A stretch of DNA of 62,318 nucleotides from Pocillopora damicornis (taxonomy: Eukaryota). Location: assembly GCF_003704095.1 (NCBI RefSeq), contig NW_020843911.1, positions 62,001-124,318 of the forward strand, given 5' to 3'. How positions within the stretch are numbered: the stretch's first letter is position 1; every line of letters starts with the position of its first letter. The position numbers were made by a program, and so were the translations under genes. The notes beneath the pieces are model-generated. The model was not told the DNA's origin and did not search any database. It worked only from the letters and a program-made list of their open reading frames with translations. This document shows, piece by piece, positions 17,359 through 59,930 of the stretch.

Positions 17359-20300
17359 ATGGCCGTCGGCCTGCTTCTTAAAAGTGTATTTTTCGAACTG
17401 CTACTTCAATTCATTCATGTGCAGGTAGACCTTGTGCTAGCTAAGTGGTGAATTCTCGTGTTTTGGTCAGGTGTAATGCTCACGTCTGGAAAATTTTTTG
17501 CGAGTCTGACTTATAAACGAATTTTTACTTGTGTTCCTTTTTCGCAGATTGTCACCGGAGCGGGCACATTCGAAATCCACTTGGTTTCGATACAAAATAT
17601 TAGAGGTGAGAAATACGATGGTAGCTGCTGTGATGGGAGTCGCACAATATATCGAGGACAACATCAATGCCTGGACGAGTGCGACACATTCTTCAGAGTT
17701 TGTCTCAAGCAATACTCGCAATCTGTTTCGCCAACGGGTGCTTGTACATTTGGCGAGCACACAACTGCTGTATTAGGAGGGAGTTCGATCACATTTACGA
17801 ACACTACATCGCCGAGTGGTTTTCGCAACCCGATTTCTTTACGCTTCGAGTTTTCATGGCTGGTAAGTCATTGTAAATCCTGTTCAATGTTATCTTAGAA
17901 TACCATGGGTTTTGGTGTCACTTTGTTTGACGATTTCCGTTATTTTTTTTAAATCTGAAGAAAATTCAGCGTAATAATGTGGATTAAATTTATGCGACGT
18001 TCACGCAGATGGGATATGTTTTTCAATAATAAAAATTTAATGTAACCGCGTCTAACAGCCGCTTTTAGCCAAAAAAGAGAGAGTGCTGTAAGGAAATTAT
18101 TTGGAATTTTTTTTAAAGAGATTTTTATAGGAGCTGTATTAATCGTAAATGCGACCGCTGGGAGCACGCTCCCACGAACAATCATTTCACTTGGAAGTTT
18201 GCATTTCAAAAAATCAATTCTCTCATTGGCTCTCGGAAGCCTCTCAGAGAAGCACGTTCATTTTACAGAATCGACAACTTCGTCTCAGCGAAAAATCGAA
18301 GAAATAAATACAGCTGCAACTATTTAAACAGGCCGCGCTGGGCAAAACCTGTTTCAAACTTATTTTCTCTGAGAGCATCGCATTAGAGATTTTTAAGGTT
18401 GTTTATCCTAGATTGTAGCGTAGTTTCTGGGCCACGTGTCTTCAGTTTGACAGCCTTTTGTGAGAATTATGTTAATTATGGGAGTTACGTTGTATTTGCA
18501 ACACAATGATAGCTACTGACTGGAAAAATCAAAGAATCAGCGTCGAAGCCGCATGGCCGAGGCGCGAATTATTCGTTGAGTGTTTAGCTTCACCTGCAAT
18601 AGAAACGAAGTGTTGTGGGCTTCCGACTTGTCAATTTCATAGATGTATATTTCAAGATATTAACGCATGCGAAATTGTTTATTTTCGACTTTCCCACGTT
18701 CACCGGGCCCTAAATAAATAATTCTCGATTCGTTACTTCGTACCTACTGGAAGTATTACAATGCAATTAAACTTTCAATTGATAGCATGCTCTAGAGAAA
18801 TGACTGGTTGCCAATGGAGTTGATCTTTATTCTGTCTCCTTCAGCATTGTTTGATTTCGATTCGTGGGTTTCATGATCGACACAAGAGCCTTTTATTAAC
18901 TCGGGTAGATCGCGGTGGTTTGTTGATTTCATTAAACCTCTTTTTCATCTTTTCTCTTCATTGAATAGAAGTGACACATGTGCCGAATTATGTTTTAGAA
19001 GAATACAATTCCCAGTTGACGGACTTGATGAAAATATATTTATTTCATTTCTCGTTGCGCGGGAGCGCTTTAGATTACCTTTTACAAGGAATTCCTAAGG
19101 GCTTTTGATTTTACAAAATTTGCTAGTTTGCTGTGACTGTGAAAATTGTTTGGGTCATCTAGTGTTTTTTTATTAGTTTTCTTTATATTATCTGCATGGT
19201 GTCCGATTGTGATCAAAGAATACATATCAAATTCCACTCAAAATAGATTAATCCTTTACTTATGAGACCTTGTGTTCTTTGTGGTTTTTGTCCACTGCCT
19301 GTGGCATCTTAATGCTTGTGATTATATGGTATCCATGAGGTCAGAGCATTGGAGAAAAAAGTTATCTTTTACAGTGGTACATGTCAAAATAATCTAAAAT
19401 TCTGTCCATGGAATGTTTTGTAATTTCCCTTCAGCTTTATGTAAAGCATTAGAAATTGCTGTGAGATGTTTGGAATTTTGCTGTCTGCTCTTTGAATTTT
19501 GAATTAATTACAGTTTTTATTTGCTTTACTGTTTAGCATATGACTATTTGCTACAACTAAAAGCTTAGATAGGTTTTTCCAGAACCTGTAACTTTACATC
19601 ATTTCATTACAAAGCTTGCAAAGTGAGTTTTATATAATTTCAAATATTTGCTGTGTCTTTTTAAGGGGACTTAATAAAGAGTTATACCTTAAAATTTGTG
19701 TGCCACTAATTAATTGTTTTGAGTCAGTCAAAAACATCCTTAGCTTATTCCTGATAACACGTAAGAAGTCAAATCATTAGTCTGCCTTAAAAGCCAAAAA
19801 TGTTAAGTCCAATATAATTTTATTGTTTCTTAAAGATGTGTGTAAATTTTCTTTTTTTGATCTTTGTGCTATCAAAAATGTTGGAAATATAGATGTGTTA
19901 GATTGAAACACAAGACTTAATGTAAAGCATGAATTGCAAATAAGCCAAAATACATTATGGTTTCCTCCTTTTACCAGACTGAGATAAAATTTTGCAGTGC
20001 CTAATAACTATTTTCCAAACAATTCTTTGCTTGACACAGGTTTTTTCATTATTGTTCACAGTCTCTTAAAATAGGTTTATAGAATGAAAAAATGGATTAG
20101 TCTTATTGATTCTGCAAGTTTTGTGTTAGTTTTATTGAAAGAATAGTTTCTCTCTTCTTAGGTAAACAATTTGGGAAGAAACAGAATCAATCATATTTCT
20201 TATTTGCACTGTAGAAATTTATTCAGCTGTCAAAAGTAGCTTGGTCCATTTGTAACAAAAGAGGACTTGTGTTTGGAAGTACATGTCAGTGTTGTATTAC

Positions 20301-23300
20301 CAGTACTTCTACAAGGCTTGCTCTTTATTGGAATATGGCTGCTAGCAGTGTGAACCTGATGATCTTAAGCCTGTGTTCGTTTCAGATGCATAAGAAATGA
20401 GAGAAGATTGCAAATTAACTTTCGAACTTAACCCCCCTTTGTAAACATTTCTAGTAAGATCCATGGGTTGCTTTTGTGACCATAAATTCTCATGTAAGCA
20501 ATGTTTGAATTTACAGGTGCTATTTTCTCCCCATTTTTTCCAAATTTAATTAAGACCATAGCAGGAATAGTATCATATTATGATCTTTCCTGTGCTTACT
20601 TTGGAGGAAATTTGTCTTGTGTCACAGTTTAGCTTGAAACTAGTTCATTGATGGATCCAGTCAGAGTTTCAAAAATTTTCTTGGAACTTCTCACTAGGCT
20701 AGTGTTTCAAAGGTGTTAATCATTTATTATGAAAACTCTTGCTGGAAGCTAGCATTCCCTCAGAATTCCTAGCCAAATTTCTAAAATGTGTGCATATAAC
20801 TTTACGTTCTTTGTTTTGGTATGGAACTTTGTTCTTGAATATCTTCATTTTGAAATTGAATGAAGTGAGTTTTGGAATTGTAGAATCACTCTGTCACAAA
20901 AAAAAAAAAATAAATAAAATAAATACTCTATTTAATGATGAACTTTTTCACCAAAAAAAGCTTGTTATAGAAAATATTGTAATTTGTAACTGTTTCTCTT
21001 ATCAAGGAATCTCTGAATTCATATTTGCCATAGTATTTCTTGTGTTGCATTTGAGTCTCAGTCGTCTTTCTAAAAATCTTTTAACTTCAAATCTTTTGTT
21101 TGTGATAATAAGTTGAATAATAGATGACACATTAATAAATACTAAATTTTTAATCAACAGAGTAGTATAAAAATTGTTACAACTCACAGAATCTGGGACA
21201 TCTTTTTTTTTCATGGAGGGGATTCAAAAGAGTGGAATTTTTAAATAAAGCAAAAAAAGAATAGAATTTGTATAGAGCAATGTTAGGTTGAGAGTAAACA
21301 ACTTTGGCTAAATTTTACATACATGTATTAAATGTTATTGTCATCAAGGGTTTTAAACTTGACTTTATAGCCAAGTTCATAACTCTCATAGTTTAAGTTA
21401 TCAGGAAATCTATGTGCAACTCATTTGTTTGTGTTTATTTGTAAGAACCACAACCTAAGGTGAACATGTTTTTTCACATGTTTTATACGATGGCCTCTGC
21501 TCTATATATTTTATTGAAAAATTCCTTTTTTCATAACACTTTTTTGTCTTTCACGTCCATTATGCTCTGAATGTATGACAGTGTTTGTGCTAACAAAGCT
21601 GGGAAAATACTGATTGAAAGGTTGCCTAATATTTTCAAAGCAGCTGTTGGAAGGAATTTCAAATATTTTGAAATGAGTTTCTGAAAATCCTCTGATTTAT
21701 CTCTTATATGAAAAAGAAAAATTTCAAGTTTTATTCTGAATTTGTGATCATTGTTCCTTTCACATCTTTTTTTATGCCAAGAGCATTGAGTTTCTTGATT
21801 ATCTGTAATTTCTCTTCATAATGTGAGTCACGTTTTAATTTTTTGAATGCTTAGTGCTGGGAAACAGCATCTATTGTGCTTGAGTTATTGTCATCACCTA
21901 ACAGAAAACTTATGTGTGTCATGCAAGTGCTAAACTGGTCATATGCTGTTTTCTCTCATTTCAGACCACATACTACCTAATTCTGGAAGCATGGGATGCA
22001 GATAACTCAAGTAAGGTTCATCTCTACCTGAATGGTGCAAAGCGTATAAGACTTTTTCTTGCATGACTGAAGCCTTTCATACTTTTTAATAAATGCATTG
22101 TCCTAATGGATATCTTCATTCAATATTGTTACCATACATGAAGTTGTTATGGAAATATGCAGAAGATTGTTTTCAATCCATATCTTGGCAAGTTCTGTCT
22201 CTCAACAAAAATTAAATGAGTTATGTTATTTTAATGTGCAATCTCTCTTTTAATCCTCCTGTGGAATAAATGGAGTTTTTGTCTGTATCTATCATGAATT
22301 GCCAATATGGCACAACTTCAAATATATCTGTTTTCATGAATATTGAAGGAAACAGCAAACTCAGCTCTCCAGTTGAATGTAGTTAGAATATACTAAAAAT
22401 TTACTAATACTTGGGGAGGTATTGAATGACTTTCATGTACTCTTTGTTGAATTTTTCTCAAACTTGCCTTGGGGTGAACTAAAATTATTGGGGCTTTTGC
22501 TTAACTTTAATCAACAAACTGCCTCTTTTTCCCCTATTAGGCAACCGTGAACTCATAGATAGAGCAACCCAGCGAGGTACACTACTTCCAAACAAGACAT
22601 GGGTAATTCATACATACAATGGCCCTGCAGCAACAATTAGTTACAGATTAAGGGTGGTATGTGACAAATATTACTATGGGAAGACTTGTACTGAGTTGTG
22701 CAAACCACGAAATGACACATTTGGACATTATTCTTGCAATGAGAATGGGAAAAAAGTTTGTTTGCCTGGATGGAGAGGGCATTTGTGCGATACAGGTAAG
22801 TATCAACGTGCTTAAAACTGATCAGTTTCTTTACAATTGTGCCATTAAAAAGCTATAAAGTACAGGTAAACATAACATATTGTGTTTTTTTTCTTCTCTA
22901 GCAATCTGTAAAACAGGCTGTGATCCAGTGCATGGTACTTGTAGTGTTCCAGGCGAATGCAAGTAAGTGGTGACATTTTGGGGTTAATTTTTTTTTTCTT
23001 AATAAGAATAAGTCTTATTTGGTGACATGGTCATGTTACTTATCAACTGTTTTAAGTATTCATTGCAATTCAATGTTAATTTTTTTGAAATGGGTTGTGT
23101 TTGTTTCAGCTGTAACTCAGGCTGGAAAGGGGAACTTTGCGATGAATGTCGGCCCTACCCAGGCTGTTCTCATGGAACTTGCAGTCAGCCATGGCAGTGC
23201 AACTGTCAGCAGCAATGGGGTGGAATTCTTTGTGATGAAGGTAAAAGAAGCTTGTGTTCAATAGGGTTGTGTTTCATTCTTAAATCTTGTCTATCTGCCT

Positions 23301-26300
23301 TTGTATTGTTGTAGCTTCACAGATTTCCGGTCTGATGGTGCTTAATTTTTTGACAGATCTGAACAAATGCAGAGAAAAACCTTGTAAGAATGGAGGTATA
23401 TGTTATAACACAGAAGCCAATCAGTACAGATGTGAATGTCAAGCTGGATTTACTGGGGTCAACTGCGAGACAGCAATCGACTTTTGTGGATCATCTCCTT
23501 GCAAGAATAATGGAACTTGTCATAATGATGCCACTGATTTCCGCTGTAACTGTCCGCCAGGTTGGGCTGGGCCCACTTGTGAAATAAGTAAGCTTAACTT
23601 TGCAAAGTTGGGTGTCTCAGTATTTGTTAAAATGAAATTATGTTTTTGTACAGGAATAATTCTTAAATTGTTGAATGTGTTTTTTAGGTAGGGACTGTCA
23701 AAGTCAACCTTGTCAGAATAATGGAACATGCATTAACAATGGCCAGGGTTACCAGTGTAAATGTTTACCAGGCTGGACAGGACACATGTGTGGTCAAGGT
23801 TAGTTGTTCTCCTTTTTGAACTGTTTTTTTTATTTTTTCTTCCTAATGGTCCAACAAACATTAAGGAAAAGCAAGCATATAATTGATATTAGATTAGGAA
23901 GGACTTTGACATGACCATGACCGCTCTTTCATTATTTTGTCCCTTCTCAATGTCCCATCATCTCTTCTTGCCCCTCCCTAAGGGAAATACAGACTGCTTG
24001 CAAAATTTTGGTTCCTGAACTTATTCAACAAACTAAAGAACACAGAGTTTTGTTAATTTGATCACAGGATTGTAAAACTGCCTTAATTCAATAAATTTAT
24101 AATCTTATTTAATTTCAATAGACATTGATGAATGTGCAGCCAAACCATGCTCCAATGCTCTGAAGTGTGTTAATTTGGTAAATGACTATGCTTGTGAATG
24201 CAAGGAAGGATGGAAGGGTAGAAACTGCAATGAGAGTGAGTATTGTTCTTGTCTTTCCATTGCACATCCATGCAAATGTATGGCATAGTAGCATAGTATC
24301 TGCAATGCAACTAGCAACAGGAATGATTTTCATGTGGCTTGGGTATTTTCTTTTACCAGGTATCAACGATTGTGTAGGACAGTGTAGAAATGGTGGAACA
24401 TGCGTGGACTTGTTGAATGATTACAAGTGTAACTGTCCCGTTGGATTTACTGGCAAGGATTGCGAGACCAATATCGATGACTGCCAGTCTATCCCATGTA
24501 CTAATAGTGGAGTGTGTAAAGATGGCATTCAGAATTACAGTTGCATTTGCCAAACTGGATTTTCAGGAAAAAATTGTCAAGTTGCAGTAAATGAATGCCA
24601 GCCTTCACCTTGCGTCCATGGAACATGCACGGACTTACTTAATGACTACAAGTGTTCTTGTAGTGCAGGGTATACTGGCAGAAATTGTTCAATGTTGGCA
24701 ACAACACCTAATAGTTGCGACCCATACCCTTGTCAGCATGGAGCCACATGCGTTAAAAACGCTGATGGCTCTGATATCTGTCATTGTCCTCCAGGCTACA
24801 CTGGCTCATATTGTGAAACTGACATCAATGAGTGCTTGACAGCGACGTGTCATAACGGTGGTACATGTGTGGATGCAGCCAATGGATTTAAATGTGTCTG
24901 CCCAACTGGTTTTTCAGGATCAACTTGCCAAGTTGACTTAGACTCGTGCATTAGCTCGCCTTGTCATGGCTCGGCAACATGTGTTGATAAAACAGATGGC
25001 TATCAATGTATATGTGCTGCGGGATACACTGGAGTAAACTGTGATCACAATGTGAATGATTGTGGTACATTGAGTCCTTGTCGCAATGGTGGAACTTGTC
25101 TGGACAGACTCAACGGATACCAGTGTCAATGCAGGTGAGATATGAAATCAGTTACATCAATTTTGTTTTCTTTTGGCAGTTTTTAATTGCCAGAATTTAC
25201 TCGCATCAGTAAGAACTGAGACGTTAAAAGAAAGATTTAAAAGAGTATCAAATATATAGAAGGCTAGTTTACAATGTTATAAAAATGCATTATCTCTGGT
25301 AGTACCGAAATTGGTATTTGACGTGTGATAAAATATCAACCTAACGACAACTCTATGGACAAGCTTACAACATGCTCTTTGTAGTCTCTAGCTAAGTTTG
25401 TAGACTGTAGATAGTTTGGGTGCAAAATCAGAACTGCCAAGAGTGCGAACCCTTCTGTAGAAACTCAGATGTTTTTTAGCGTGCATGCACTTGTGTTGAA
25501 CATTTGCCCACATGTTTTGTTGTTGCGATTGTTATTGCAGGCCAGAGTTTACTGGAGCTGAATGTGATGTCCCCATTAACAAATGCACCAACGAATCTTG
25601 TGTTAACAATGGCACATGCAGCCAAGGTGTTGGAATGATCACTTGTAGTTGCCCCACTGGCTTTACTGGACAGAGATGTGAAACTGAGATTGATGCCTGT
25701 GACTCCAATCCGTGTCACAATGGCGCGACATGTCAAAAGATTGGTGTTAGTTATGCCTGTTCATGTGCAGTTGGTTTCTCTGGGCCTAACTGCGCAACGC
25801 GAATCGATTACTGTGCTAATGTCACTTGTACCAATGGTGGTACATGCAACAATATTGCAGGAAAAGCTTCTTGTAGCTGTTTGCCTGGGTTTGCGGGATT
25901 ACGATGTGAAATCAATATCGACGAGTGTCATTCTAGTCCATGTCGCAATGGAGGTAGCTGCGTAGACAAGGACAACAGTTTTCATTGTGTATGTCCAGCA
26001 GGAACTCGGGGAGACGTTTGCGATCAAGGTAAATTCGTAAAAATTATCACCATGTTCTATGCTGTGTTGATGTCTGAATAGCAAGTCAGCTTGTTGGTCT
26101 CTATCGATGCATCCATGAAGTTTCCCAACGTCAAAAACCCATTTTCTTTACTACAAAATTTCGATATATAAATTCTATATCTTACTCATGTTATTTCTGT
26201 TTTAATTTTTATTAGTGATCGATCCATGCTTGGAGCCTGTTTTAGTGAATGGATCCTCATTTTTGAGAGATTCCGGCGTATGTGGAGCTTATGGTACCTG

Positions 26301-29300
26301 TGAAAATGTCGGTGTGGGAAAATTTAGATGCAAATGTGACAAAGAGCATACTGGAAACCACTGTCACTTAAGTAAGTGCGTGTGTAAGGAGATGTATGTT
26401 AAGGTGGTATGTAGGCGATCACATCTATTTCTTTGTTCTGATGTGAAAATTGATTCTGATGTAAAGATCATTTCCCTCGTTAGAAATTGACCATTGCAAG
26501 AATCACACTTGTAAAAATGGAGCAAGTTGTCTCGATGGCGATGGAAATTATACATGTGTATGTGGCGATGGCTGGGAGGGCGTCTACTGTGAAAAAGGTA
26601 TTCAAGTGTTTTGTTCTTTAATTTATTGTGTTTACAACTCCATTTATTTTTTTGAAGAGAATCAATTGGACAGGGAAAATCATCTGAAAGAGAATCAGCT
26701 TTTTTCATTGAATCAAGGCCCCAGAAATCGTACGAAGCATATTTTGTTACTGTTTTGAACACTGCCGTACTACACTGCTCCTTTTTTGAGAGAATATGAT
26801 TCAGTCGCCTCATAAAGTCGTTGTAAAATGTTTACGCTATGATTTCCTACTCCTCGTCTTCTGGGAAGCGTTATTTATGTACCAATTTTTTTTTTTATTT
26901 GCAATATCTTACGCTTGTATCTTGTTCACTCTTTCTTTAACAGATATTGATGAGTGTAACTCGAATCCTTGTCGAAATGGCGGGAACTGTACTGACCTAG
27001 TCAACGGATATGTTTGCAAATGTCCCCACCCGTGGAAAGGACAAATGTGTCAATCAAGTAAGAACGTGTGACGTTTTGCATGATAAATAAGATCCGGAAT
27101 TTGAGAATTTCAATTTTTGTTTGTAATTGCTTACACTGGATGTTAATTTTGTTTGAGTGTAATTTAAAATTTCTGTAAAAAATGTCAACAGCAACATCGC
27201 ACTGTGATGGCAATCCTTGTCAAAATGGAGGGTTATGCACCGATACAGGAGACGATTTTCAATGTAGTTGTCAAAACGGATTTTCAGGAAGGATCTGTCA
27301 ATTAGGTAAGACGTTCTACAAGATTTATCATCGTTTTTTATTTTATCGACGTTCTTTGTTTTCTTTGTTTCATTATTTCATTGACATGATTTTTTTAAAA
27401 CTGGTGGTGTATTGAGACTTGTTTTTCAACCACCCGTGGAAAAATGATCGATAACATTGTGATGAATGAGTTTGGACAGCACAGCTCACAACTCCCTTTT
27501 TCGTTGTTTCAAAGAACCCTATTGTTTTGCTAATGAACACCTGTTGTTCTGTTCATTCGTTTTGTGGCTTTATTGTCGTATCACACAAATCAAACGCGGC
27601 AACATGTGCGCTTCAATTGGTCTCCACACATCGCGATCTCTTTTAGAAACCTTCTGTTGCATCTACTCTTGAGTGTTCTTTCAAAGCGTGATCTTTTGAT
27701 TAAAATAAAGGGCGCGTTCCCCAGAACGTGCGCAGCATTTGGAGTATTCTAAACGGATGGAACCGCAAATGCGTGTAATTGAATTTACAATGGCTAATGA
27801 TACGCCTTTCCATTGAGATCATGTTAAGATCTAAATGACGATGTCTGCACATTTTCATTAAGTTCTTGATGTGCCTATTGTTTGTGCCCGATGTTTTCTG
27901 TTACTGACGCAAGTGGAAGCGTGTTTGATGCCATCTCCGGTCCAATTTCATCACAGCGTTTTAAGCTCAATCTTTCAAATTAAAATCACAGCTAAGATGG
28001 TAATCTGCAAATTACACTTGACAAAAATTTTACCATCAAGGTAGCCATGGATTGGGCGACAAACATTCTGTTATTTAGATAAGAAAGTGATTATGGACTA
28101 AATACACAGAGTGCCCATATTTTTTTGGCGTCATAGCTTTAGCTTATAATATTATGTACGGAAACATTTTAGGCACAGCCTGTCGGCCGTTTTTCTTATA
28201 TTGTTTACTGTTTCGGTTCGGAAATGTTAAAAGCTTTCTGAAGTTGAAAAAAAAGTTCAATTAAAATTGCCTTTTAGATAGAGTATTTTTTAAAAGTGGC
28301 AGCACACGTGCGTGATAGTTTGTGTTGTATTGTTTTCCTTTTTGTCTAGCACCCAAGCCCTGCTCGTCCGAACCTTGTCAGAATGGTGCAACTTGTTTGA
28401 ATGCAGGCGATGGAGAGAGTTTTTCGTGTGTCTGCAAAGATGCATGGGAAGGAAACCTGTGTGAGAAGAGTAAGTAGAGCATTGCGCATTTGTGCAATAA
28501 AATTCTGCGTTCTCTCTTGCTCTCTTCTTGTGTTGGAAGTGCACAACTTCCCAACGTTAAGCCTTAGCGCTTGAACATCGGTATCTATATTCTCTATACT
28601 GTTTTACAAACATTTTCTATGTTGCTGACGTGGAGAATTTGCTCACCTATTTAGAACTTACTTACGGAGAATTGAGATGCTAGTAACTCTTGAAAAGAAT
28701 TTGCATTTATAAATCTCTCTACACGCACATATAAACCTGTTTCCCACGCACCCCTGGTAAGCTCAAGAAATGTTATGCTTATATTGGAGGTGCCGAGTTG
28801 AATTAATTTTTCATGGCCTTTGTTCTACTTTTAGATGTCGACGACTGTGCATCCAATCCTTGCCACAATGAAGGCACGTGCATCGATGGTGAGGGCTGGG
28901 TCCTCTGCTCATGCGCGCCCGGATTTACGGGACCAGATTGTAAAATCAACATCAACGAATGTAACTCGTCTCCGTGCAGCGGTGGTGCAACTTGTAAAGA
29001 TAAAATCAACGGCTTTAAATGTATCTGCCCGCCAGGAAAGTTTGGAGATCGTTGCCAAGGTAAGAGTTTGAACAACTTGATAGTTGAAAGCATGGATGGC
29101 CTCATTTGCATGACGTATTGCTTAAGTGAACTTCACTTTCATTTCGTTGTTCCTTAAATAATTTGTTCGAAATTTATTCCATCAGATGACGAACATGATA
29201 AGAAACACTGTAAGCTGAAAGACGGCGGTATTCAGCGTCACAACACCACCGTGCCAAAAGACTGTAACTCGTGTACGTGCCTGTATGGCGTGCTGCACTG

Positions 29301-31142
29301 CACTGGAATTGACTGTGGTGTTCCAAATTGCTTGAATCGTACCCAGGCTGGCAGCTGCCCCACTGGCGCGAAATGCGTGCCTAAGGTGGCGGCGGAGTGC
29401 CTCAGCCCTCCTTGTGGTCGATGGGGAGAATGTCAAGGTGGATCAACTGCCAAGATTATTACCGGAATAAATGAAGGCGCGTGCCTTCCCAATAGTACCT
29501 ATTTGAATGGGGACTGTGCCAAGATTCACATTGTGTTCCAAGTGGATAAGCTTCCCAAGGTCAGTTGAGCAAGGTTTAGTTGTATTTGCTACGGAAGGGT
29601 ATGATGCGGGCTGATTGTTTGAGTTCAAGCCTCGGGAGGGTTAAATAGTTCAGTGTAGTACACGGTAGCCTCTATCGCAGCTGTCGTTTGGTCTCGTTGG
29701 AGGGAGAGCGCGTTGCGTGACGAGACCAAACAACGGTTCTGAAGGAGACTTGCTGCAAAGTAGATCCATGCAAACAACACGGAAATAAGTCCCTGAAGTT
29801 ATAGGCGATGGATTTTCCATCACGATATCAAAGCTCATTCTAAATGTGTTGGATTCTCTTTCAACAGGGAACCCTTGTGGAAGAACTTTGCCATCAGTTG
29901 CGTTATCTACCAATGTTGAAAAAATGGGCAGAGAAGGCAAGACTTCGACTGCTCTGTGAAGGCCGAGGGAAAGACGGATCAACATCAACTGTCATTGTAT
30001 CAGTGGTAAGTGTAACTGTTGTTACCGAAGGATTTTATGAGTTCTCTTTAAGTTTTGTATGTTTTTCTCATAATTTTTTTTAGGCACGCTGGTCAGGCGC
30101 AAACGTTTTATCTTCCTTTCTTTTAGCCAGAAACAGCAGTGCTTAGATATTGTTACTGTCTCTTGCAGGCCAGCACTCCGCGAACGGAAGTAGCTGAAAA
30201 GGCGGCCATTGATATCGCCCGATACATACGGTCCGTGCCATCTGAAAAAGGCCGTGAAATAAATATCACTCTTTACAACGTGCTCATAGCTGTGGATGAA
30301 GTCACTGTGGAAAGATCTGTTTCTCTTTCCTACCACGAAGAGGAAGGTGAGAGATGTAAGAGTGAAGGAAATTCCAGGATAGGACATGACCGACTTAAAG
30401 CGAAGTAAAACGAAACCCAAAGTATAGTCACACGGCCAATCAGAACAATGGATGATATTATTAGTAGGCTATGAAAACATCACGTGCGCGGCAAAACGGG
30501 CGTAATCGAGTGGGTATTGGCTCTAGTTTTTCGTCTGATTGGTTGAGAAGGTGGCGCGAAGTTTTAAGACCAATAACTAAACGTAGTAAGGGATAACCGA
30601 CGTAATTCTAGTTTAATTTTGAAACTCAAGTTCACGTTTTGAAGAAAATTAGTTGAACAACAGCCAACTTACGAGGTCTAACTCCGTTTGTTATTCTCTT
30701 AACAGCCGCACCGGACTACCTCATTCCTTTGATTGCATCACTCGTGGTGTTGGCGGCCATTCTTTTGCTAATACTGTGCATCAGAGGAAAGTGGAGGGAA
30801 AGTAGACGAGCGAAAAGAGAAAATCGTTTAGCTGCAAGGCCTACTTTGAAAAAGAAACGAAATACAACGCAGGAGAAGCCGTTGACTACTGCTAGAACTT
30901 ACTATAATCAGACTTCCACCGAGTCTACGGCGTCTTCGTCGTCGACATCCACGTCGACGCGTTCAACGGAGTTAAGAAACTTTGAATACAATCGGGCGAG
31001 TTTGCTCGACTCCACGCCCTCTGTGTGTTCTACTCCACAAGTTTTGTCCCCGCCCCTCTCCCCCAAGGAGGAAGGCGCTAAAGACGAATGGAGGAGATTT
31101 CGGGTGCAAAGGAACAGTACACAAATAGAAATAATCGTATAA
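17359..31142 (+). CDS. JAG1: Jagged/Serrate-family Notch ligand, 21 coding exons, 1520 aa (SP, C2/MNNL, DSL, 24 EGF, VWC/Cys-rich, TM, ICD)
   Basis: Exons reconstructed by hand, all GT-AG and phase-compatible: 17359-17424, 17548-17862, 21965-22010, 22541-22795, 22902-22962, 23110-23240, 23357-23587, 23688-23798, 24122-24235, 24360-25134, 25541-26028, 26216-26371, 26484-26597, 26944-27057, 27192-27305, 28350-28469, 28835-29059, 29186-29559, 29868-30005, 30169-30346, 30706-31142. Total 4563 nt. Motifs: [29 protein letters not shown]...[13 protein letters not shown]; [52 protein letters not shown]; Jagged-type inserted EGF VIDPC...[10 protein letters not shown]; [23 protein letters not shown]; [23 protein letters not shown]. 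The symbol denotes the Jagged family (co-orthologue of JAG1/JAG2). Confidence 0.95.
28556..28695 (+). mobile_element. Internally deleted copy of MITE family B in Jagged intron 16
   Basis: aacatcggtatctatattctctatactgtt...gctgacgtggagaatttg joined to ggagaattgagatgctagtaactctt. Matches both ends of the 42104-42516 element. Confidence 0.55.
29666..29750. mobile_element. Short hairpin-type MITE in Jagged intron 18
   Basis: Imperfect inverted arms of about 30 bp: agcctctatcgcagctgtcgtttggtctcgt and acgagaccaaacaacggttctgaaggagact. Confidence 0.6.
30395..30640 (-). mobile_element. MITE family C copy in Jagged intron 20
   Basis: Reverse complement of the family C core: cacggccaatcagaac...gcgcggcaaaacg...tctgattggttgagaaggtggcgcga...accaata. 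Confidence 0.7.
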
Positions 31143-36150: not shown

Positions 36151-36250
36151 NNNNNNNNNNNNNNNNNNNNNNNNNNNNNNNNNNNNNNNNNNNNNNNNNN
36201 NNNNNNNNNNNNNNNNNNNNNNNNNNNNNNNNNNNNNNNNNNNNNNNNNN
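36151..36250. other. Assembly gap (100 N)
   Basis: Run of 100 n, a placeholder of unknown true length. Confidence 0.99.
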
Positions 36251-36363: not shown

Positions 36364-36834
36364 ATGGAGACTACAGTATGGTTCCTGTTACTCATTTTCT
36401 TTTGGTTGAGGCTTACATCTTGTGAATACGTCATCCAGACTTTTGATGGAGAAATTGGAGCAGGAAATTTTACTTATTTTACATTGAAGAAAGAAGGAGA
36501 AGTAACATTAATCCTTGAGAGCATAGAGGGTGATGCCGATATATATGTTTCACAAGAGAATCTCAAGCCTGATTTTGAAAATTACGATCTCAAGTCAGCA
36601 ACTTGCGGTGAAGACATTGTTACAATTCCAAGTACTTATAAGAGACCTATTGGAATCTCAGTGTTTGGCCATGTATATGCCCCTACCACTAGATACACTA
36701 TGAAAGTCTTAATGGACTATTCATCTGGAGATGAGAGTGAAAGATATCATAGTGAAACTGATGAGCCAGAGGAATCACTTATTTGGACAGTGTTTGTCAA
36801 CATTTTAAAGCTTATTCTGGAGATTCTTCTGTGA
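36364..36834 (+). CDS. C6orf120: UPF0669 protein C6orf120 homologue, 156 aa, single coding exon
   Basis: Signal peptide followed by GEIGAGNFTYF, GDADIYVS, YDLKSATCGED, RPIGISVFGH and C-terminal EESLIWTVFVNILKLILEILL. These match the recalled family motifs GQIGAGNYSY, GDADLYVS, YELQSATCG, RPVGIGVYGH and [21 protein letters not shown]. Confidence 0.93.
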   Translation: METTVWFLLLIFFWLRLTSCEYVIQTFDGEIGAGNFTYFTLKKEGEVTLILESIEGDADIYVSQENLKPDFENYDLKSATCGEDIVTIPSTYKRPIGISVFGHVYAPTTRYTMKVLMDYSSGDESERYHSETDEPEESLIWTVFVNILKLILEILL

Positions 36835-42400: not shown

Positions 42401-44583
42401 AGAAAACAGTAAGGAGAATATGCATACTGATCTTAGGGTGTAAAGGGTTAATGTTTGATTCAGGAGTGATACTGTGAGGAGAAATTAAATGCTGGTCACC
42501 CTTAGGGATATGAGGGTTAACTACTTGCCAAATCCTACATTGAACATCGCAGAGTTCCTATGGTAAATCAATTTTTGACTTACCTGTGTTGGCTCACCAT
42601 CAGTTTCTTGATCCCAATCTTTTTCTGACTGAAACCGAAACTGTGAAGCAGGATCAGCTGAAAGATGATACGAAAAGATTATCTTTTTAAACTCTAACAT
42701 CAGCTTGCATATTCTCCATATGGTTCTCTATATGTTTCCAGTAGAACTGATATGGAGAAACTACTCAACAATTAAGAAATTAAGTGCTCCTCCTTCCTGT
42801 TTGATCCCACTGCAGTACCATACAGAGAAATAAGATGCCAATCATTCTTAGTGATTAAATGGCTTGAGTTAACAAGTCTTACAACAATTGCCATGTACAC
42901 TGATTTTTCTGAATACAAATTGGCAACTCTTAGAGTTTTACCTGATCTTTGAAGAAGAACACTAAAGTCCTCTCCTCTTCTTAAAATGTTTTCATTGTCA
43001 TCTTCATCTTCTCCTGTATCTGAAATAAAGTAATATTTGAACATATATATTTCCATGAATTCAGTTTCATGAATTGAACTCTTTAAATAATATATGACTT
43101 GTCACCATGCAGCTATCACATAAAATGTCTCCGTGATCACGTTGTTTGTAAGACCATGACCTTTGACCTCCCCTTTATGACAACTAGGTCATGGGGTTTT
43201 TGTTAGGAAATGTAGTAGCAACACAGTAGGGTAAATTAACAATAGAATGATCCCTGCATCATAATAGATTCTGTGATTTGCAATACCTGACTCATGACAA
43301 CAGCCTGTCTAAAGTATATTGCCTCAAATGGGCTCCAATTTATTGGTTTAATCTCTCAGGGAGTCAAATTCTTCTTGAGAAGAGGATTAATCCTTTAACT
43401 CCCAGAGTAGATCAACATGAAACTTCTCCCCAAAATATCCATATATTATCCAGCACACAGGCAATGAGAATGTTCAAACTTATCAGGTAGAAGCTGCTAT
43501 ATTGATCTAATACTGAATTCTCATATCTAAGTTACAAGGAAATGTGTAGCAGTAGAGGGGAGAATTAACAATCAGACCTTGGGAGTTTAAGGGTGAAGAA
43601 GTTCTGTCTCCTATTACATCAGATCCAGCAATTTATGACACTATATACTGGATTGCTCTCAATCAATACCCAGGACATTCACAAAAATATTTTATGAGAC
43701 GGGATTGAGTGTATTTCACACTATAAAAAAAGCAGATGGCTAAAATGCAGAATAAGGATCAGAGGTAGATATAATTGCAATCTTTGACTTTCTTTCTTGA
43801 GTTAAGGATGCCACTGTTCAATGCTGAACAACAGTCCAAATCGACAAGGCACATTTATAAAAGCTAAACCCTATATTTGGTCAAACACAGATATTGCAGC
43901 TAAACAAATGACATAAAATATCAAGGAGTGATCAAAGTCAGTACTGTGCCTGCTATCATATCAACTTGACTAAATGTTATTAGCCCGTCCCTGCTGCAGA
44001 ATGCTCTGACAAGAACCCAAATCCTATAGACTTAGGAAAGCATCCATTCTCAAATACACGCCAAATAACATGCAATTCAAAGTAGTAACCAAGGCAAAAT
44101 AAATTGGTCCTGAAGTGATTGTGTGTTCTGCAGCCTTTCCAAGCAGATCGCTGGGAACACCTTCACCTCTGGGTCTCAATGTTTGTGACCTCACAGTGAA
44201 TCTTTGCGGAAACCCATTTTAAGAATCTGGTGCTCAACTTTTAATTAACTCACCTTGCTCAAGGTCTCCATACCTATCCCAGTTGCTTGAGATATTTCTC
44301 CTTGAGAACTTCCTCTGATCTCCACAACAAACATAAAAATGTATATTAATACGAGAGCTTATAACAGTATCAGATTATTAAATATCGCAGACATTATTTT
44401 GCAATTCAGTACACAGTTCATTACCCCGTCAGTTTCCGCTAGATCGACGTTTCCTTGCGATTCTGTAGATTCTTTTCCTTCATTAGTTTCCTTCTTTTCT
44501 TTAGAGGTTGTCTTCTTTTCGGAAATTCCGTGTTTTTTCTTGTATTGTGCGCGCTGTTTTTTCTTATGTTCATCCGGTCTCAT
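39425..44583 (-). CDS. AVEN: Cell death regulator Aven homologue, 7 exons, 368 aa
   Basis: Minus-strand exons 44583-44425, 44314-44254, 43019-42942, 42657-42584, 41923-41825, 40858-40334 and 39535-39425. All GT-AG, phases 0,1,1,0,0,0, total 1107 nt. Aven motifs in order: FSRRNISSNWDRY, RGEDFSVLL, SQFRFQSEKDWD, LASSLNCVPLHKRLDI, DDDLDFLLSL and C-terminal DDLEDWLDSVL. Confidence 0.92.
42104..42516 (+). mobile_element. piggyBac-type MITE family B (outer copy) in AVEN intron 4
   Basis: Begins ctaa|CCCTTTACACCCTAAC and ends CTTAGGGATATGAGGG|ttaa. About 205 bp once the nested copy is removed. Confidence 0.85.
42244..42447 (-). mobile_element. piggyBac-type MITE family B (inner, inverted copy) with TTAA duplication
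   Basis: 204-bp reverse-complement copy of the same family, flanked by TTAA at 42240-42243 and 42448-42451. Ends TAGGGTGTAAAGGG|ttaa. Confidence 0.85.
42684..42866 (+). mobile_element. Degenerate MITE family B copy in AVEN intron 3
   Basis: ctaacatcagcttgcatattctccata...gttctctata...ggagaa...gagaaataagatgccaatcattcttag follows the family B motif order. Confidence 0.55.
43391..43593. mobile_element. piggyBac-type MITE family A, full-length copy in AVEN intron 2
   Basis: ttaa|TCCTTTAACTCCCA...TGGGAGTTTAAGGG|tgaa: imperfect 14-bp TIRs with a TTAA-like flank. Related copies at 43-165 and 2870-3020. Confidence 0.8.
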
Positions 44584-44721
44584 CTTGAAATGAGCATACG
44601 GAATATTTTTACAGCGGAGTCACGTACTCATCATGCGCACTCAGACACACAAATCCAAAATGGCAGACGAAGGGTAAGCGGTTCCTTAAATAATTGTTTC
44701 ATACTGTTATTTGTTTGGAAA
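44584..44721. promoter_or_regulatory. Putative bidirectional promoter shared by AVEN and SDHAF1
   Basis: Only 138 bp separate the divergent start codons. CpG density rises here, and the interval contains gtcacgt, catgcgca and CAAAATGGC motifs. Confidence 0.7.
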
Positions 44722-44961
44722 ATGGTGCGAAGTCGCCTTCAGAAGGAAGTACTCTCTTTATATCGAAGATTTCTACGTGCAAGCCAAGACAAGCCTGGTT
44801 TTACAGAACACATAAAATATGAGTTCCGAAAAAACTCTGGGATACCTAAGACGGACGGTCTTCGCATCGAGTACTTGTTGAGAAGGGCACAGAATCAACT
44901 CAAACAACTCGAAAAGATGGAATGTAAATCAATGGGATTCTTTGCACAGCATGAAGATTAG
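44722..44961 (+). CDS. SDHAF1: Succinate dehydrogenase assembly factor 1 (LYR-motif protein), 79 aa, intronless
   Basis: MVRSRLQKEVLSLYRRFLRASQDKPGFTEHIKYEFRKNSGIPKTDGLRIEYLLRRAQNQLKQL...MGFF has the LYR motif plus the SDHAF1 signatures SRLQxxVLSLYR, EFR, PxxDxLRIEYLxRR and terminal MGxF. Start context aaaATGG. Confidence 0.93.
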   Translation: MVRSRLQKEVLSLYRRFLRASQDKPGFTEHIKYEFRKNSGIPKTDGLRIEYLLRRAQNQLKQLEKMECKSMGFFAQHED

Positions 44962-57431: not shown

Positions 57432-58317
57432 TATCATTAAACATCATTTCAAATTCGAGAGCAAGAAACAGTCAGCTTTTGTAACAGACAGCTGTTATGT
57501 CGGATAAAAAAAAACTTTTTTTTATCTTTTTCTATGTAGATTCTTTTGTGCGTTGTCAAATTTAGTCCCGGCGGAAAAGGAATGTTTATATCCGAGACAG
57601 ACTTCAAGACGGAGAATGAAGGTTGGTATGTTCCCTCAATATCATTCAGGTTTTTCTGTCTATTTTTTTAGTTAGACCTCATAGGTGGTAAGATATGATA
57701 TTTATATTTAAGGTAATTAGTTCAAGTGGTGGGCCGGTAGTTGACAGACCACAGGGAAGACAATATTGAACTCCAGGAATCGTTCTATCAGCGCTCTCTT
57801 TATCAAAATTTTGAAAAGTGAAGTATAATTTCGTATATAGCCACTGTTTCAAATTGAAGCAATTGGCTACTTTCTTGTGATTTTCTTGGGTTTCATTGCT
57901 ATTATAAAGCAAGAACTTTCTTCGAAGAATTAAACCAGATCGTAAATTATAAAGGTTTCATACCGAGTGGCAACCATTGATATCGAAAGATTCATCAGAA
58001 ATAGGAAACCTAAGTTGAGTGCTCCCTAAATTAGAATATAGTGGTTTGTTCTGTGGAAAACATCAGATGGGGGATGTAATATAAGCATCCCCTATTCGTT
58101 TTCTTTTTCTTCCTTATCGATTACGGTGTCCGTTTATCCTTCCTTCTGTCCGTTCGAACCTATTTAGGTCTGTCTGTTTGTGTGGCCCGCAACTCTTTCT
58201 CTCTTCCTTACTCTTTGCCGCAGGATCAGAGTTAAAATGACTTAATTTAGGATTCGTTTTGAGTGTATTTTAAAGCCGACCAATGTACTTTTTTTGAAAG
58301 TTTCCATTATTTGACAG

Positions 58318-59930
58318 AGCGAGCACCGAGGAAGACTAGGGCAGAGCCTGAATCCGAACCTGAAAGCGAACCTGAAGCGGAAGGAGAATCCAAAGCAGAA
58401 GGAGAACCCAGTAGTGAAAATCACTCATACACGGAGCCTACCTCAGAATATCCAGAAGGAGAAACTGAACCGTCGCCAACGCCGGAAAATTGGCCAGAAC
58501 CAGGCCCCCGTTGGGAACAAGCATACGAGACGTGGAGATGGGCCTGGGAGCTACATGTTTACCTTTACGCGACGATATACCTTTTGATTGGCTTGTACGC
58601 CGGATATTACGTCATAGCTAACGTTTATGACGGTCTGCAAGGAAAATACCTGAGCGTGAGCCTCAATATCATGGTGTCGATGTTTGGGTTCACAAGGGCC
58701 CTTGTCATGTTTTTGGACCCATATCATCAAGGGGGTATAATTCACAACACTGCGGTGATGCGCGTGATTTGGTCCCTCGCAGGCCCTTGTCTCACGGCCT
58801 CCGACAGTTTGATGATTCTTGCCCTGATAGAGACGGCAAAAATCTCCGTTGCACCTCCTAAGCTTCAGAAAGCAAGCACAAACATTATTATCATAAGCTT
58901 TCATTTTGCACTTGTAATAACTACAGACTGTGTAGTTGCCGACTATGTGGAAGCGAAAGTTATGTTGTTATTTTGTCAGTTGTTTTTTGTTACGTGGGGT
59001 TTTGTGCTTGGAACTATAAACTTTATCCTTGGATACAAACTGGATAAACAACTTTTCAGTCACAAAAAACCAAAAGAAACAGCGGACAAAATATACATTT
59101 ATCTTATTTACGCCTCCGGCCTAGCAAACTACTTTTTATGCGCAATCATTGTTTATTCAGCGTGCGGAGTATTTGGTGTTTATTCGGATGTTCAATTTGT
59201 AGATGCATGGCCTTGGTGGGCCTTGCAAACGATGTCTCGCTTCAGCGAGATCCTCGCGTGTGTCTTGATATTCACAGTTAGTGCTAAAAGGACCCGAGTG
59301 AAAAAGGCAGTCGCTCAGTTAACGGATGAAAAAAGCTTAGACACAATCATCCCGGGAGGAATCGGTTCTACGCAATCTTTATCGTGGTCTTCAAGATTCA
59401 GAAATTGCTTCAAGCGTAAAAAAGTCGCCGCTGACAGAAACAGTGGGAGTGCAATAAGCCTATTCACAGCTCTCCGTGAAATGGCTCTGGCTGCGACCGG
59501 TGAGAACTGGTACGGGACAAATCTGGATCCCCCAATAAAAGATAATGGGGAATGTTGGGTAGAAACAAAAACGACTTCGTCTGTAATTCATCTGCCTGGG
59601 AAAACGAAAATACATCCACATGTAAACACAACTGACGACTTAGGGAGCGATGGCGAGGAAGTGGAAAAGGAGTACTTAGAACTTGAGTTAAGACGCGTAC
59701 AATCAAGAAGAGCGAGCATGTTTACAGCTCTTCACGACGCTAAAAAGACGCGTAACACGGCCTTTCCACCCGGAAAAATGACTCGGCTAAAGCCATTATT
59801 CCAAACTGATAATTCTGGAGAAACTAGCATCAAGGAGATTGACTCGAAGAGACAAAACTCTGGAAATACTTGGGGTAAATGGCCGGAAACAACACTTCCA
59901 AATATGGCAAACACGGAAGAAAATTACTGA
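58318..59930 (+). CDS. PRRT3/PRRT4-family multipass (about 7 TM) membrane protein, main terminal coding exon; N-terminal exon(s) unresolved
   Basis: Long ORF (58263-59930) entered via acceptor ttgacag|58318 (phase 1). Acidic Pro/Glu stalk AEPESEPESEPEAEGE, then PEPGPRWEQA...WAWELHVY, TRALVMFLDPY and WPWWALQTMSRFSE, which match recalled PRRT3/4 motifs. About 7 hydrophobic segments. Candidate upstream exons 57540-57621 (or to 57625) and 54921-54994 are phase-compatible but unproven. Confidence 0.8.

What the first reader, a model, noticed from the sequence alone, without database searches (positions are those of the whole stretch)
24707..26028. Eight extra EGF repeats at the position of the JAG1 EGF10 anomaly: a possible ancestral 24-EGF Jagged
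Seen: 24 EGF repeats. EGF1-9 and the last seven match JAG1 EGF1-9 and EGF10-16 in order. Eight further complete repeats lie between ...YTGRNCSML and VIDPC, starting [13 protein letters not shown] and ending CDQ|VIDPC. Recalled human JAG1 here reads [24 protein letters not shown], a stranded two-Cys fragment shaped like the start of an EGF (CxxxPC). Inference: that fragment is the scar of an internal deletion of an 8-repeat block, and this gene keeps the pre-deletion state. Alternative: a lineage-specific insertion. The block sits in two unusually large exons (775 and 488 nt, joined by a phase-2 intron), unlike the single-EGF exons around it. A longer ectodomain would change ligand reach and cis/trans geometry.
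Basis: partly seen in the sequence, partly recalled or inferred. Interest (0 to 1): 0.8.

Follow-up and report, generated by a model that had tools for sequence, protein, structure and literature searches.

The report
Coral Jagged with 24 EGF repeats
This coral's Jagged gene (a Notch ligand) carries eight extra, expressed EGF repeats that all sampled cnidarian classes share, at the exact spot where bilaterian Jagged, JAG1 included, has an odd two-cysteine stub, so the stub is probably the scar of an ancient deletion.

Summary
The + strand at about 17.5-31.1 kb encodes one Jagged/Serrate-type ligand with 24 six-cysteine EGF repeats. Eight of them (X1-X8, 24716-26021) lie between EGF9 and the long-loop "VIDPC" repeat.

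The block is not coral-specific. Nematostella, a scyphozoan (Rhopilema) and an unnamed octocoral-like sequence carry the same eight repeats. Nematostella, Rhopilema and the octocoral Xenia also share the large exon and the phase-2 intron inside X4.

Ten full-length bilaterian Jaggeds (vertebrates, amphioxus, a tunicate, a hemichordate, molluscs, arthropods) all have 16 repeats. Each has a C-x4-C stub at the 3' end of the EGF9 exon, just before a phase-1 intron that is shared with cnidarians.

The X repeats are as diverged as any other Jagged EGFs, and no donor gene was found.

Xenia independently lost about five repeats and kept a partial-EGF stub at an exon end. That is a natural precedent for the proposed event.

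Direction cannot be proven, because no outgroup has a Jagged. I rate a stem-bilaterian deletion at about 0.6. It is a new variant of a known ligand and of moderate interest.

The parts
17563..17862 (+). Exon encoding the first part of the MNNL/C2-like N-terminal domain of the Jagged gene
   Evidence: Pfam MNNL, E 1.5e-32. The donor GTAAGT follows ..FSW.
21965..22010 (+). Small exon ([15 protein letters not shown].) that continues MNNL. The model is provisional.
   Evidence: Found by motif, with AG/GT sites. The same small exon occurs in Nematostella, Rhopilema, Xenia and amphioxus. It was not covered by the reads that were laid.
22541..22795 (+). Exon with the end of MNNL and the DSL domain
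   Evidence: Pfam DSL, E 3.5e-20.
22902..24235 (+). Exons for EGF1-EGF6: 22902-22962, 23110-23240, 23357-23587, 23688-23798 and 24122-24235
   Evidence: EGF2 matches PF21700 EGF_DL_JAG (1.6e-14) and PF21795 JAG1-like_EGF2 (1.7e-10). Joints from 23587 onward are seen in RNA contigs.
24360..25134 (+). Large 775-nt exon holding EGF7, EGF8, EGF9, X1, X2, X3 and the first five Cys of X4
   Evidence: Joints 24235>24360 and 25134>25541 appear in RNA contigs of 4 runs. Pfam finds 7 EGF stretches. An exon of the same extent exists in Nematostella, Xenia and Rhopilema.
24689..26028 (+). The extra block: a 9-residue linker plus eight complete EGF repeats. X1 is 24716-24814, X2 24833-24928, X3 24947-25042, X4 25061-25565 (split by the intron), X5 25584-25679, X6 25698-25793, X7 25812-25907 and X8 25926-26021.
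   Evidence: One-to-one counterparts exist in Nematostella, Rhopilema and the octocoral-like sequence.
25135..25540 (+). Phase-2 intron (406 nt) inside X4
   Evidence: GT..AG; skipped in RNA contigs. A phase-2 intron lies at the same point of X4 in Nematostella, Xenia and Rhopilema.
25541..26028 (+). Large 488-nt exon holding the end of X4 and X5-X8. It ends ..C-D-Q-G| in phase 1.
   Evidence: (joints), and (4 EGF stretches).
26216..26371 (+). Exon of the atypical long-loop repeat (VIDPC..., the counterpart of JAG1 EGF10)
   Evidence: Joints 26028>26216 and 26371>26484. It groups with bilaterian EGF10 as a single clade in the repeat tree (SH-aLRT support 78).
26484..29059 (+). Exons for E11-E16: 26484-26597, 26944-27057, 27192-27305, 28350-28469 and 28835-29059
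   Evidence: RNA joints; repeat coordinates.
29186..29559 (+). Exon of the Jagged-type cysteine-rich (VWC-like) region
   Evidence: The phmmer search over 1.84 billion representatives returned 87 hits. Every hit that was inspected or named is a Jagged/Serrate protein or fragment. It is the only such exon in the coral genome.
30657..31139 (+). Open frame holding the last exon: transmembrane helix, cytoplasmic tail and C-terminal ..QIEIIV. The exon start inside the frame was not fixed.
   Evidence: Translation. It is nearly identical to the Nematostella tail.

Best explanation
The window holds the coral's single Jagged gene. Its product is a type-I membrane Notch ligand built from MNNL/C2, DSL, 24 EGF repeats, a cysteine-rich region, a transmembrane helix and a tail ending in a PDZ-type motif.

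The eight repeats X1-X8 are a constitutive and ancient part of cnidarian Jagged. [quoted passage not shown]

Bilaterian Jagged/Serrate has only a C-x4-C stub at the very same point. The stub closes the EGF9 exon, just before the phase-1 intron that both groups share. The most economical history is therefore one deletion in the bilaterian stem. It ran from just after the second Cys of X1 into the intron behind X8, and a phase-1 donor near the break rejoined the exon to the EGF10 exon. The two orphan cysteines stayed as a pair.

Functionally (inferred), the block adds about eight rod-like modules between the receptor-binding head and the membrane-proximal part. That is roughly 25 nm if fully extended, at about 3 nm per domain. 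All eight coral X repeats carry the O-fucose consensus.

Shown: the block, its expression, its spread in Cnidaria, the shared intron, the bilaterian stub and the Xenia precedent. Inferred: the direction of change, the break points and the effect on signalling geometry.
For: - Gene identity: Pfam MNNL and DSL; the Delta/Jagged EGF2 models; the Cys-rich exon returned 87 hits, and every one inspected or named is a Jagged/Serrate protein or fragment.
- 24 repeats; spliced as modelled in RNA contigs of four studies.
- The same eight repeats occur in Nematostella P0312/P0104, Rhopilema P0315/P0096 and the octocoral-like P0100/P0349.
- The big exon and the phase-2 intron in X4 are shared by coral, Nematostella, Xenia and Rhopilema.
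- All 10 full-length bilaterian Jaggeds examined have 9+1+6 repeats plus the stub.
- The stub lies at the exon 3' end before a phase-1 intron in amphioxus, Ptychodera, Haliotis and human (exon 13 ends at c.1720, the first base of codon 574; PMC6899717). The intron has the same position and phase in the cnidarians.
- The X repeats are not young. X-X, E-E and X-E identity all lie at 26.5-27%. Their best matches to E repeats are equal for cnidarian and bilaterian copies, for example X2-E8 at 40 versus 41%. X1 and X8 form their own clades.
- The offset that a tandem duplication at E9|E10 would predict shows no signal.
- No donor was found. The best other EGF arrays in the coral genome are 41-52% identical and match in sliding registers. 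The best non-Jagged proteins listed in the public set reach at most 48%.
- Precedent: Xenia lost the end of X8 plus E10-E13 and kept a 4-Cys stub at an exon end, with a phase-1 intron after it. The missing exons are absent from its locus.
Against: - There is no outgroup. Jagged is not found in sponges, placozoans or ctenophores (PMC2770060, PMC12166595, read), so gain and loss each cost one step on the tree.
- The stub is only about 6 residues long and is generic. The proline before its second Cys is present in vertebrate JAG1, amphioxus and arthropods, but absent in molluscs, the hemichordate, the tunicate and JAG2.
- The EGF9-to-next-Cys linker has 6 residues in bilaterians and 9-11 in cnidarians, so the match is not exact.
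- After more than 600 million years, repeat identities are near saturation. An early cnidarian-stem gain could look the same.
- A marginal collinear similarity of X1-8 to E4-11 (p about 0.02 after nine offsets) is unexplained.
- Bilaterian sampling misses Xenacoelomorpha, chaetognaths and many small phyla.
- Owenia and one fish JAG2-like protein lack the stub, so the site is labile.
Confidence: 0.6

Rival explanations
1. Gain in the cnidarian stem at an unmarked site. The common ancestor had 16 repeats and no stub, as Owenia looks today. Eight whole EGF modules were then added between EGF9 and EGF10 in stem Cnidaria, by exon duplication or shuffling at the phase-1 intron, followed by intron loss that fused them with EGF7-9. 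Bilaterians independently acquired a small C-x4-C insert at the same place.
For: EGF modules bounded by phase-1 introns are classic shuffling units, and the block ends at a phase-1 intron. Owenia (P0033) and an Alosa JAG2-like protein (P0071) lack the stub. Repeat number is labile in this family: Hydra has 5-6 (PMC3180645) and Xenia has 19 plus a stub. There is no outgroup to exclude it.
Against: It needs two independent events at exactly the same residue position. It gives no reason why the bilaterian insert should look like the first two cysteines of an EGF sitting at an exon end. No intron bounds the block on its 5' side in any cnidarian. No donor or parent repeats were found. The stub is present in chordates, a hemichordate, molluscs and arthropods, so its absence in Owenia and Alosa is best read as secondary loss.
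Confidence: 0.2
2. In-register insertion into a pre-existing stub. The ancestor already had 16 repeats plus the stub. In stem Cnidaria about 7.7 repeats were inserted right after the stub's second Cys, for example by unequal recombination with another EGF array. This turned the stub into a complete X1.
For: It requires a single event. EGF arrays are abundant in the coral genome and could pair with the stub.
Against: The insertion would have to start after C2 of a repeat and end exactly at a repeat end, inside an exon and in frame. It leaves the origin of the half-EGF stub unexplained, and that stub itself implies an earlier lost repeat. No donor-like block was found.
Confidence: 0.07
3. Mixed history. 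The ancestor had more than 16 but fewer than 24 repeats, with at least X1 present. Bilaterians truncated what was there, and cnidarians expanded the rest by old tandem duplications.
For: The stub only proves that at least one repeat once stood there. A marginal collinear signal of X1-8 to E4-11 and a slightly raised X2-X8 identity of 41% hint at old internal relationships.
Against: X-X identity equals E-E identity. No period-1 to period-4 signal exists inside the block, and the duplication offset expected at E9|E10 is flat. The 8-repeat block and its intron are identical in layout across Anthozoa and Scyphozoa.
Confidence: 0.13

Closest known systems
Vertebrate Jagged1/Jagged2 (JAG1, JAG2)
   Same: The domain order is the same: MNNL/C2, DSL, atypical EGF2, EGF array, long-loop EGF10, cysteine-rich region, transmembrane helix and a C-terminal hydrophobic PDZ-type end (..EIIV versus ..EYIV). 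E1-E16 group with their bilaterian counterparts by position in the repeat tree: 48 label changes, against a minimum of 23 and 222 when shuffled. The phase-1 intron before V-I-D-x-C is shared.
   Different: It has 24 EGF repeats rather than 16. It has no two-Cys stub; eight full repeats stand in its place. EGF7 to X4 lie in one 775-nt exon, whereas bilaterians have two phase-0 introns inside EGF7-9.
Drosophila Serrate
   Same: It is a Jagged-type ligand with a stub-like C-x4-C after EGF9 (P0062..LCSQPPCNEGC..) and a cysteine-rich region.
   Different: Serrate has fewer repeats, with long low-complexity inserts. It has no X block.
Nematostella vectensis 'protein jagged-1b' (RefSeq models XP_048585833-36)
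   Same: The architecture is the same 24 repeats, with the same two large exons (about 778 and 488 nt) and a near-identical tail.
   Different: It comes from a different order (an anemone, not a stony coral). The older literature counted 17 EGF repeats for the predicted Nematostella Jagged (PMC3180645), so the 24-repeat layout is in the databases but not described in the papers I could search.
Hydra HyJagged
   Same: It is a cnidarian Jagged with DSL, EGF repeats, a VWC-like domain and a transmembrane helix (PMC3180645).
   Different: It has only 5-6 EGF repeats. It is a strongly reduced form and not representative of the phylum.

Membership tests
Jagged/Serrate subfamily of DSL Notch ligands | N-terminal MNNL (C2-like) domain | tested here: met
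   PF07657, E 1.5e-32, on window:17563-17880.
Jagged/Serrate subfamily of DSL Notch ligands | DSL domain | tested here: met
   PF01414, E 3.5e-20, on window:22540-22797.
Jagged/Serrate subfamily of DSL Notch ligands | Atypical EGF1-EGF2 pair of Delta/Jagged type directly after DSL | tested here: met
   PF21700 at 1.6e-14 and PF21795 at 1.7e-10 on window:23111-23239.
Jagged/Serrate subfamily of DSL Notch ligands | Cysteine-rich (VWC-like) region between the EGF array and the membrane; this sets Jagged apart from Delta | tested here: met
   The exon 29188-29556 returned 87 hits among 1.84 billion representatives. Every hit inspected or named is a Jagged/Serrate protein or fragment, including Serrate and the jagged-2-like proteins of Priapulus, Saccoglossus and Alosa. 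The Pfam VWC model itself did not hit this exon (one search gave only a weak CFC match).
Jagged/Serrate subfamily of DSL Notch ligands | Long EGF array with the long-loop repeat (EGF10 type) in the middle | tested here: met
   The repeat at 26227-26364 has a 17-residue C1-C2 loop. It groups with bilaterian EGF10 as a single clade in the repeat tree (SH-aLRT support 78).
Jagged/Serrate subfamily of DSL Notch ligands | Single-pass membrane protein that binds and activates Notch | not testable with these tools
   A hydrophobic stretch ([20 protein letters not shown]) followed by basic residues is present. Binding and signalling need experiments.
Bilaterian-type 16-EGF Jagged layout | Nine repeats, then a C-x4-C stub, then the long-loop repeat and six more | tested here: not met
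   The coral has eight complete repeats in place of the stub. All 10 full-length bilaterian sequences meet this feature.

The most novel reading that the evidence does not exclude
[quoted passage not shown] The '24-residue insertion' or atypical EGF10 of human JAG1, long treated as a quirk, would then be the scar of a single 7.7-repeat deletion in the bilaterian stem. That deletion shortened the ligand by about a third. It also brought EGF9 next to EGF10, creating the flexible EGF8-11 segment that, in mammals, folds back onto the C2-EGF3 head and touches the Notch NRR region (bioRxiv 10.1101/2021.02.19.432005).
Probability: 0.45. Interest if true: 0.7.

Novelty: new variant of a known kind. 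Interest (0 to 1): 0.6.

Why it matters
Jagged is a core Notch ligand, and JAG1 is the Alagille syndrome gene. Its EGF10 has an unexplained extra two-cysteine piece. Comparative papers report 12-18 EGF repeats for Jagged and note that the array falls into "two groups" (PMC2770060).

Three results bear on that:
- Cnidarians from three classes share a 24-repeat form.
- The extra block sits exactly at the anomaly.
- The anomaly ends an exon just before a shared intron.

Together they turn a sequence oddity into a dated, testable event: a deletion in the bilaterian stem. They also revise the inferred ancestral ligand.

The result suggests experiments on how ligand length and the EGF9/EGF10 junction affect trans-activation, cis-inhibition and the back-folded state described for mammalian Jagged1. 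In practical terms, EGF counts for cnidarian Jagged in the older literature are too low: 17 for Nematostella, with Hydra's 5-6 often taken as typical.

Tried and rejected
1. The phmmer search of the 50% representatives with the Cys-rich exon returned mostly exon-sized fragments and few full-length proteins. It was useful for names but not for architectures.

2. Contigs fetched for the fragment hits were short metagenome pieces of 0.7-3.9 kb and gave no upstream exons.

3. An alignment of fly Serrate with all coral exons as separate rows (A1) stacked the EGF exons on top of each other, so I did not use it. A smaller one (A2) was rough but good enough to pull in the cnidarian full-length proteins.

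4. Look-ups of non-longest isoforms failed and worked once the longest isoforms were taken from the clusters. The Argopecten gene was too long for its DNA to be returned.

5. The word search restricted to the X block was swamped by Notch, Crumbs and Eys. It shows only that no listed non-Jagged protein exceeds 48% identity to the block.

6. I looked for a placozoan "EGF+VWC" protein (Gazave's scenario II) among the Cys-rich hits, as a possible outgroup. All mid-sized hits that I read were Jagged fragments.

7. The repeat tree resolves positional orthology but not the deeper links of X2-X7, so I did not draw sister-group conclusions from it.

8. Simple tandem duplication at E9|E10 (X = copy of E2-E9) is rejected as unsupported: the residual is -0.75 points.

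9. I considered and rejected the idea that the block is an annotation or assembly artefact. It is spliced into RNA contigs of four independent studies.
Full report
**What is in the window**

The + strand from about 17.5 to 31.1 kb carries one gene of the Jagged/Serrate type.
- Single exons, given by reference, match Pfam MNNL (1.5e-32) and DSL (3.5e-20).
- The second EGF matches the Delta/Jagged-specific models PF21700 and PF21795.
- The cysteine-rich exon (29188-29556) was searched against 1.84 billion representative proteins and returned 87 hits. Every hit I inspected or that carries a name is a Jagged/Serrate protein or fragment.
- The last exon encodes a transmembrane helix and a tail ending ..QIEIIV.
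- The coral assembly (234 Mb) holds only this one Jagged-type cysteine-rich exon, so there is no second, shorter Jagged gene.
- Sequencing runs that hold the stretch are labelled coral or marine metagenome.

**Checking the observation**

I joined the exons only inside scripts, for counting and for cutting out repeats.

The spliced reading frame has 24 six-cysteine EGF repeats. E1-E9 come first. Eight further repeats follow, X1-X8 (24716-26021). Then comes the long-loop repeat that starts V-I-D-P-C (26227-26364), and then six more.

The block lies in two large exons, 24360-25134 (775 nt) and 25541-26028 (488 nt). A phase-2 intron inside X4 joins them. The next intron is phase 1 and splits the Val codon of VIDPC after its first base.

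Contigs of four RNA runs from four studies show every one of these joints, and one 6473-nt contig carries them all. No skipping joint was listed, but contigs drop rare forms.

The only slip is that "ATTPNSC" begins at 24698, not 24707.

**Is the block coral-specific?**

No. A word search seeded with an alignment of an ostracod Jagged and coral exons, followed by a search with the scyphozoan protein, brought in the relatives:
- Nematostella "jagged-1b" (P0104/P0312);
- Rhopilema esculentum "jagged-1b-like" (P0096/P0315);
- an unnamed sequence (P0100/P0349) that closely resembles Xenia's and which I take for an octocoral;
- Xenia Jagged (P0246/P0320).

Nematostella, Rhopilema and the octocoral-like sequence have 9 + 8 + 1 + 6 = 24 repeats and no stub. 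The X repeats correspond one to one and share position-specific features.

I mapped the RefSeq proteins onto their own loci. The large exon (EGF7 to the fifth Cys of X4, about 775-781 nt) and the phase-2 intron in X4 are shared by coral, Nematostella, Xenia and Rhopilema. So is the phase-1 intron before V-[IT]-D-[SP]-C in the three species that keep that repeat.

The block and its gene structure therefore go back at least to the common ancestor of Anthozoa and Scyphozoa. Hydra's 5-6 repeats (PMC3180645) are a reduction. The papers I could search give 17 repeats for Nematostella (PMC3180645) and 12-18 for Jagged in general (PMC2770060). None mentions a 24-repeat form.

**The bilaterian side**

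Ten full-length Jaggeds all have 9 + 1 + 6 = 16 repeats. They are a teleost JAG1a, platypus JAG2, lamprey, amphioxus, a tunicate, Ptychodera, a scallop, an abalone, a shrimp and a whitefly.

Between EGF9 and the long-loop repeat each has a C-x4-C piece, for example ..[20 protein letters not shown]... Fly Serrate, a stick insect and an ostracod have it too. An annelid fragment (Owenia) and one shad JAG2-like protein lack it.

In amphioxus, Ptychodera and abalone the stub closes the EGF9 exon and is followed by a phase-1 intron. For human JAG1, a published variant table places the end of exon 13 at c.1720. That is the first base of codon 574, the Val of VIDSC, two residues after Cys572 (PMC6899717). 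I took no human DNA or contig.

This is the same intron, at the same codon position and phase, as in the cnidarians. The two states thus differ cleanly: eight repeats in one group, a two-Cys stub in the other, both ending at one shared intron.

**Age and source of the repeats**

- Within the coral, non-Cys identity among the X repeats (30%) equals that among the other repeats.
- Across 15 species, X-X is 27%, E-E 26.5% and X-E 26.5%. Orthologous E repeats of cnidarians and bilaterians keep 27-49%.
- Each X repeat is as similar to the bilaterian copy of its best E match as to the cnidarian copy, for example X2-E8 at 40 versus 41% and X8-E16 at 40 versus 41%. This argues against a copy made from cnidarian E repeats after the split.
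- A maximum-likelihood tree of 270 repeats recovers positional orthology (48 label changes, minimum 23, shuffled 222). X1 and X8 each form a clade of their own outside every E group. X2-X7 are unresolved.
- The offset that a tandem duplication at the E9|E10 border predicts (X = E2-E9) shows nothing. A marginal collinear signal to E4-E11 (p about 0.02 after nine offsets) stays unexplained.
- In the coral genome the best other matches to the block are generic EGF arrays at 41-52% identity in sliding registers. Among public proteins, none of the listed non-Jagged hits exceeds 48%. No donor is visible.

**A natural precedent**

Xenia's longest isoform runs E1-E9 and X1-X7. Then comes C-QSNS-C-PRNTA-C-KVLGDSIK-C-HPK, which aligns with the first four cysteines of the octocoral-like X8. 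After that come E14-E16.

The stub ends an exon and is followed by a 464-nt phase-1 intron. The locus has no N runs and no trace of the rest of X8 or of E10-E13.

So, in the same gene family, an internal multi-repeat deletion has left the N-terminal part of an EGF at an exon end, joined in phase 1 to the next kept exon. This is the pattern seen at the bilaterian stub.

**Best reading and its limits**

One deletion in the bilaterian stem would explain three things at once: why the stub looks like the start of an EGF, why it sits at an exon's 3' end, and why it coincides with the cnidarian block. The deletion would have run from just behind the second Cys of X1 into the intron after X8, and a phase-1 donor near the break would have restored splicing.

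The rivals fare less well. One needs two events at the same residue. Another needs an in-register insertion into a half repeat whose own origin is unexplained.

Direction still cannot be proven. Jagged is absent from sponges, placozoans and ctenophores (PMC2770060, PMC12166595). The stub is short and generic. The linker lengths differ: 6 residues in bilaterians against 9-11 in cnidarians. Repeat identities are close to saturation.

I put the deletion reading at 0.6. Within that, a full 24-repeat ancestor is about 0.45, and the remainder is an ancestor with more than 16 but fewer than 24 repeats. A cnidarian-stem gain in either form stands at about 0.27.

**Function (inferred)**

All eight coral X repeats carry the O-fucose consensus C2-x4-[ST]-C3. 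Three carry the O-glucose consensus, and three have a calcium-binding type N-terminus.

At about 3 nm per domain, eight more modules could add roughly 25 nm to the extended length. That figure comes from 585 Å for the 19 domains of fully extended mouse Jagged1 (bioRxiv 10.1101/2021.02.19.432005).

In mouse, EGF8-11 is flexible. It contacts the C2-EGF3 head and the Notch1 EGF33-NRR region, and the ectodomain is back-folded (same paper). The cnidarian block splits exactly this segment, so the geometry of ligand and receptor is likely to differ. That remains to be tested.

**Verdict**

This is a new variant of a known ligand family. The sequences are already in public databases, but the papers I could search do not describe the 24-repeat layout.

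Noticed in passing
L020 (Xenia sp. Jagged locus) about 17429-18056; protein P0320 residues about 866-900: Xenia's Jagged has lost the end of X8 and repeats E10-E13. A 4-Cys partial EGF stub remains at an exon end and is followed by a phase-1 intron. The missing exons are absent from the locus.
   Followed up: yes
G000:C574:93-116 kb and G000:C3510:72007-72234 (outside the window): The DSL exon also hits a Delta-like exon on C3510 (49% identity). It further hits a dense cluster of more than 20 DSL-like stretches on contig C574, some inside a 587-aa open frame. This looks like a multi-DSL gene family.
   Followed up: no
G000:C546:35-38 kb, minus strand (about 24-27 kb upstream of the window start): Another EGF array lies in a 679-aa open frame on the same contig as Jagged. 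It is 41-50% identical to the X block in several registers, so the similarity is generic and it is not a copy.
   Followed up: partly
window 36364-36834 +, 44455-44961 +, 58263-59930 +: Downstream ORFs: a UPF0669/C6orf120-like ORF (Pfam 4.4e-38), an LYR-family (Complex1_LYR) ORF (9.1e-11), and a 555-aa ORF with no Pfam match.
   Followed up: partly
window 36151-36250: A run of 100 N (an assembly gap or masked stretch). I left it as it is.
   Followed up: no
window 24716-26021 compared with 23485-26590 (repeat matrix): X1-X8 show a marginal collinear similarity to E4-E11: +2.9 identity points after removing row and column effects, p about 0.02 after nine offsets. This is not the offset that a simple tandem duplication at E9|E10 predicts.
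   Followed up: partly
window 30657-31139: The cytoplasmic tail is almost identical to Nematostella's (..[19 protein letters not shown]). Its hydrophobic ..IIV end recalls the ..EYIV PDZ-type end of vertebrate JAG1.
   Followed up: no
P0093 (Tubulanus polymorphus, 1571 aa): This nemertean protein is annotated with the Jagged C-terminal family (PF23575). By eye it also has a DSL-like N-terminal piece, a Gla-like stretch, more than 25 EGF repeats and a long-loop EGF. It is a divergent Jagged-like architecture that I did not examine further.
   Followed up: no
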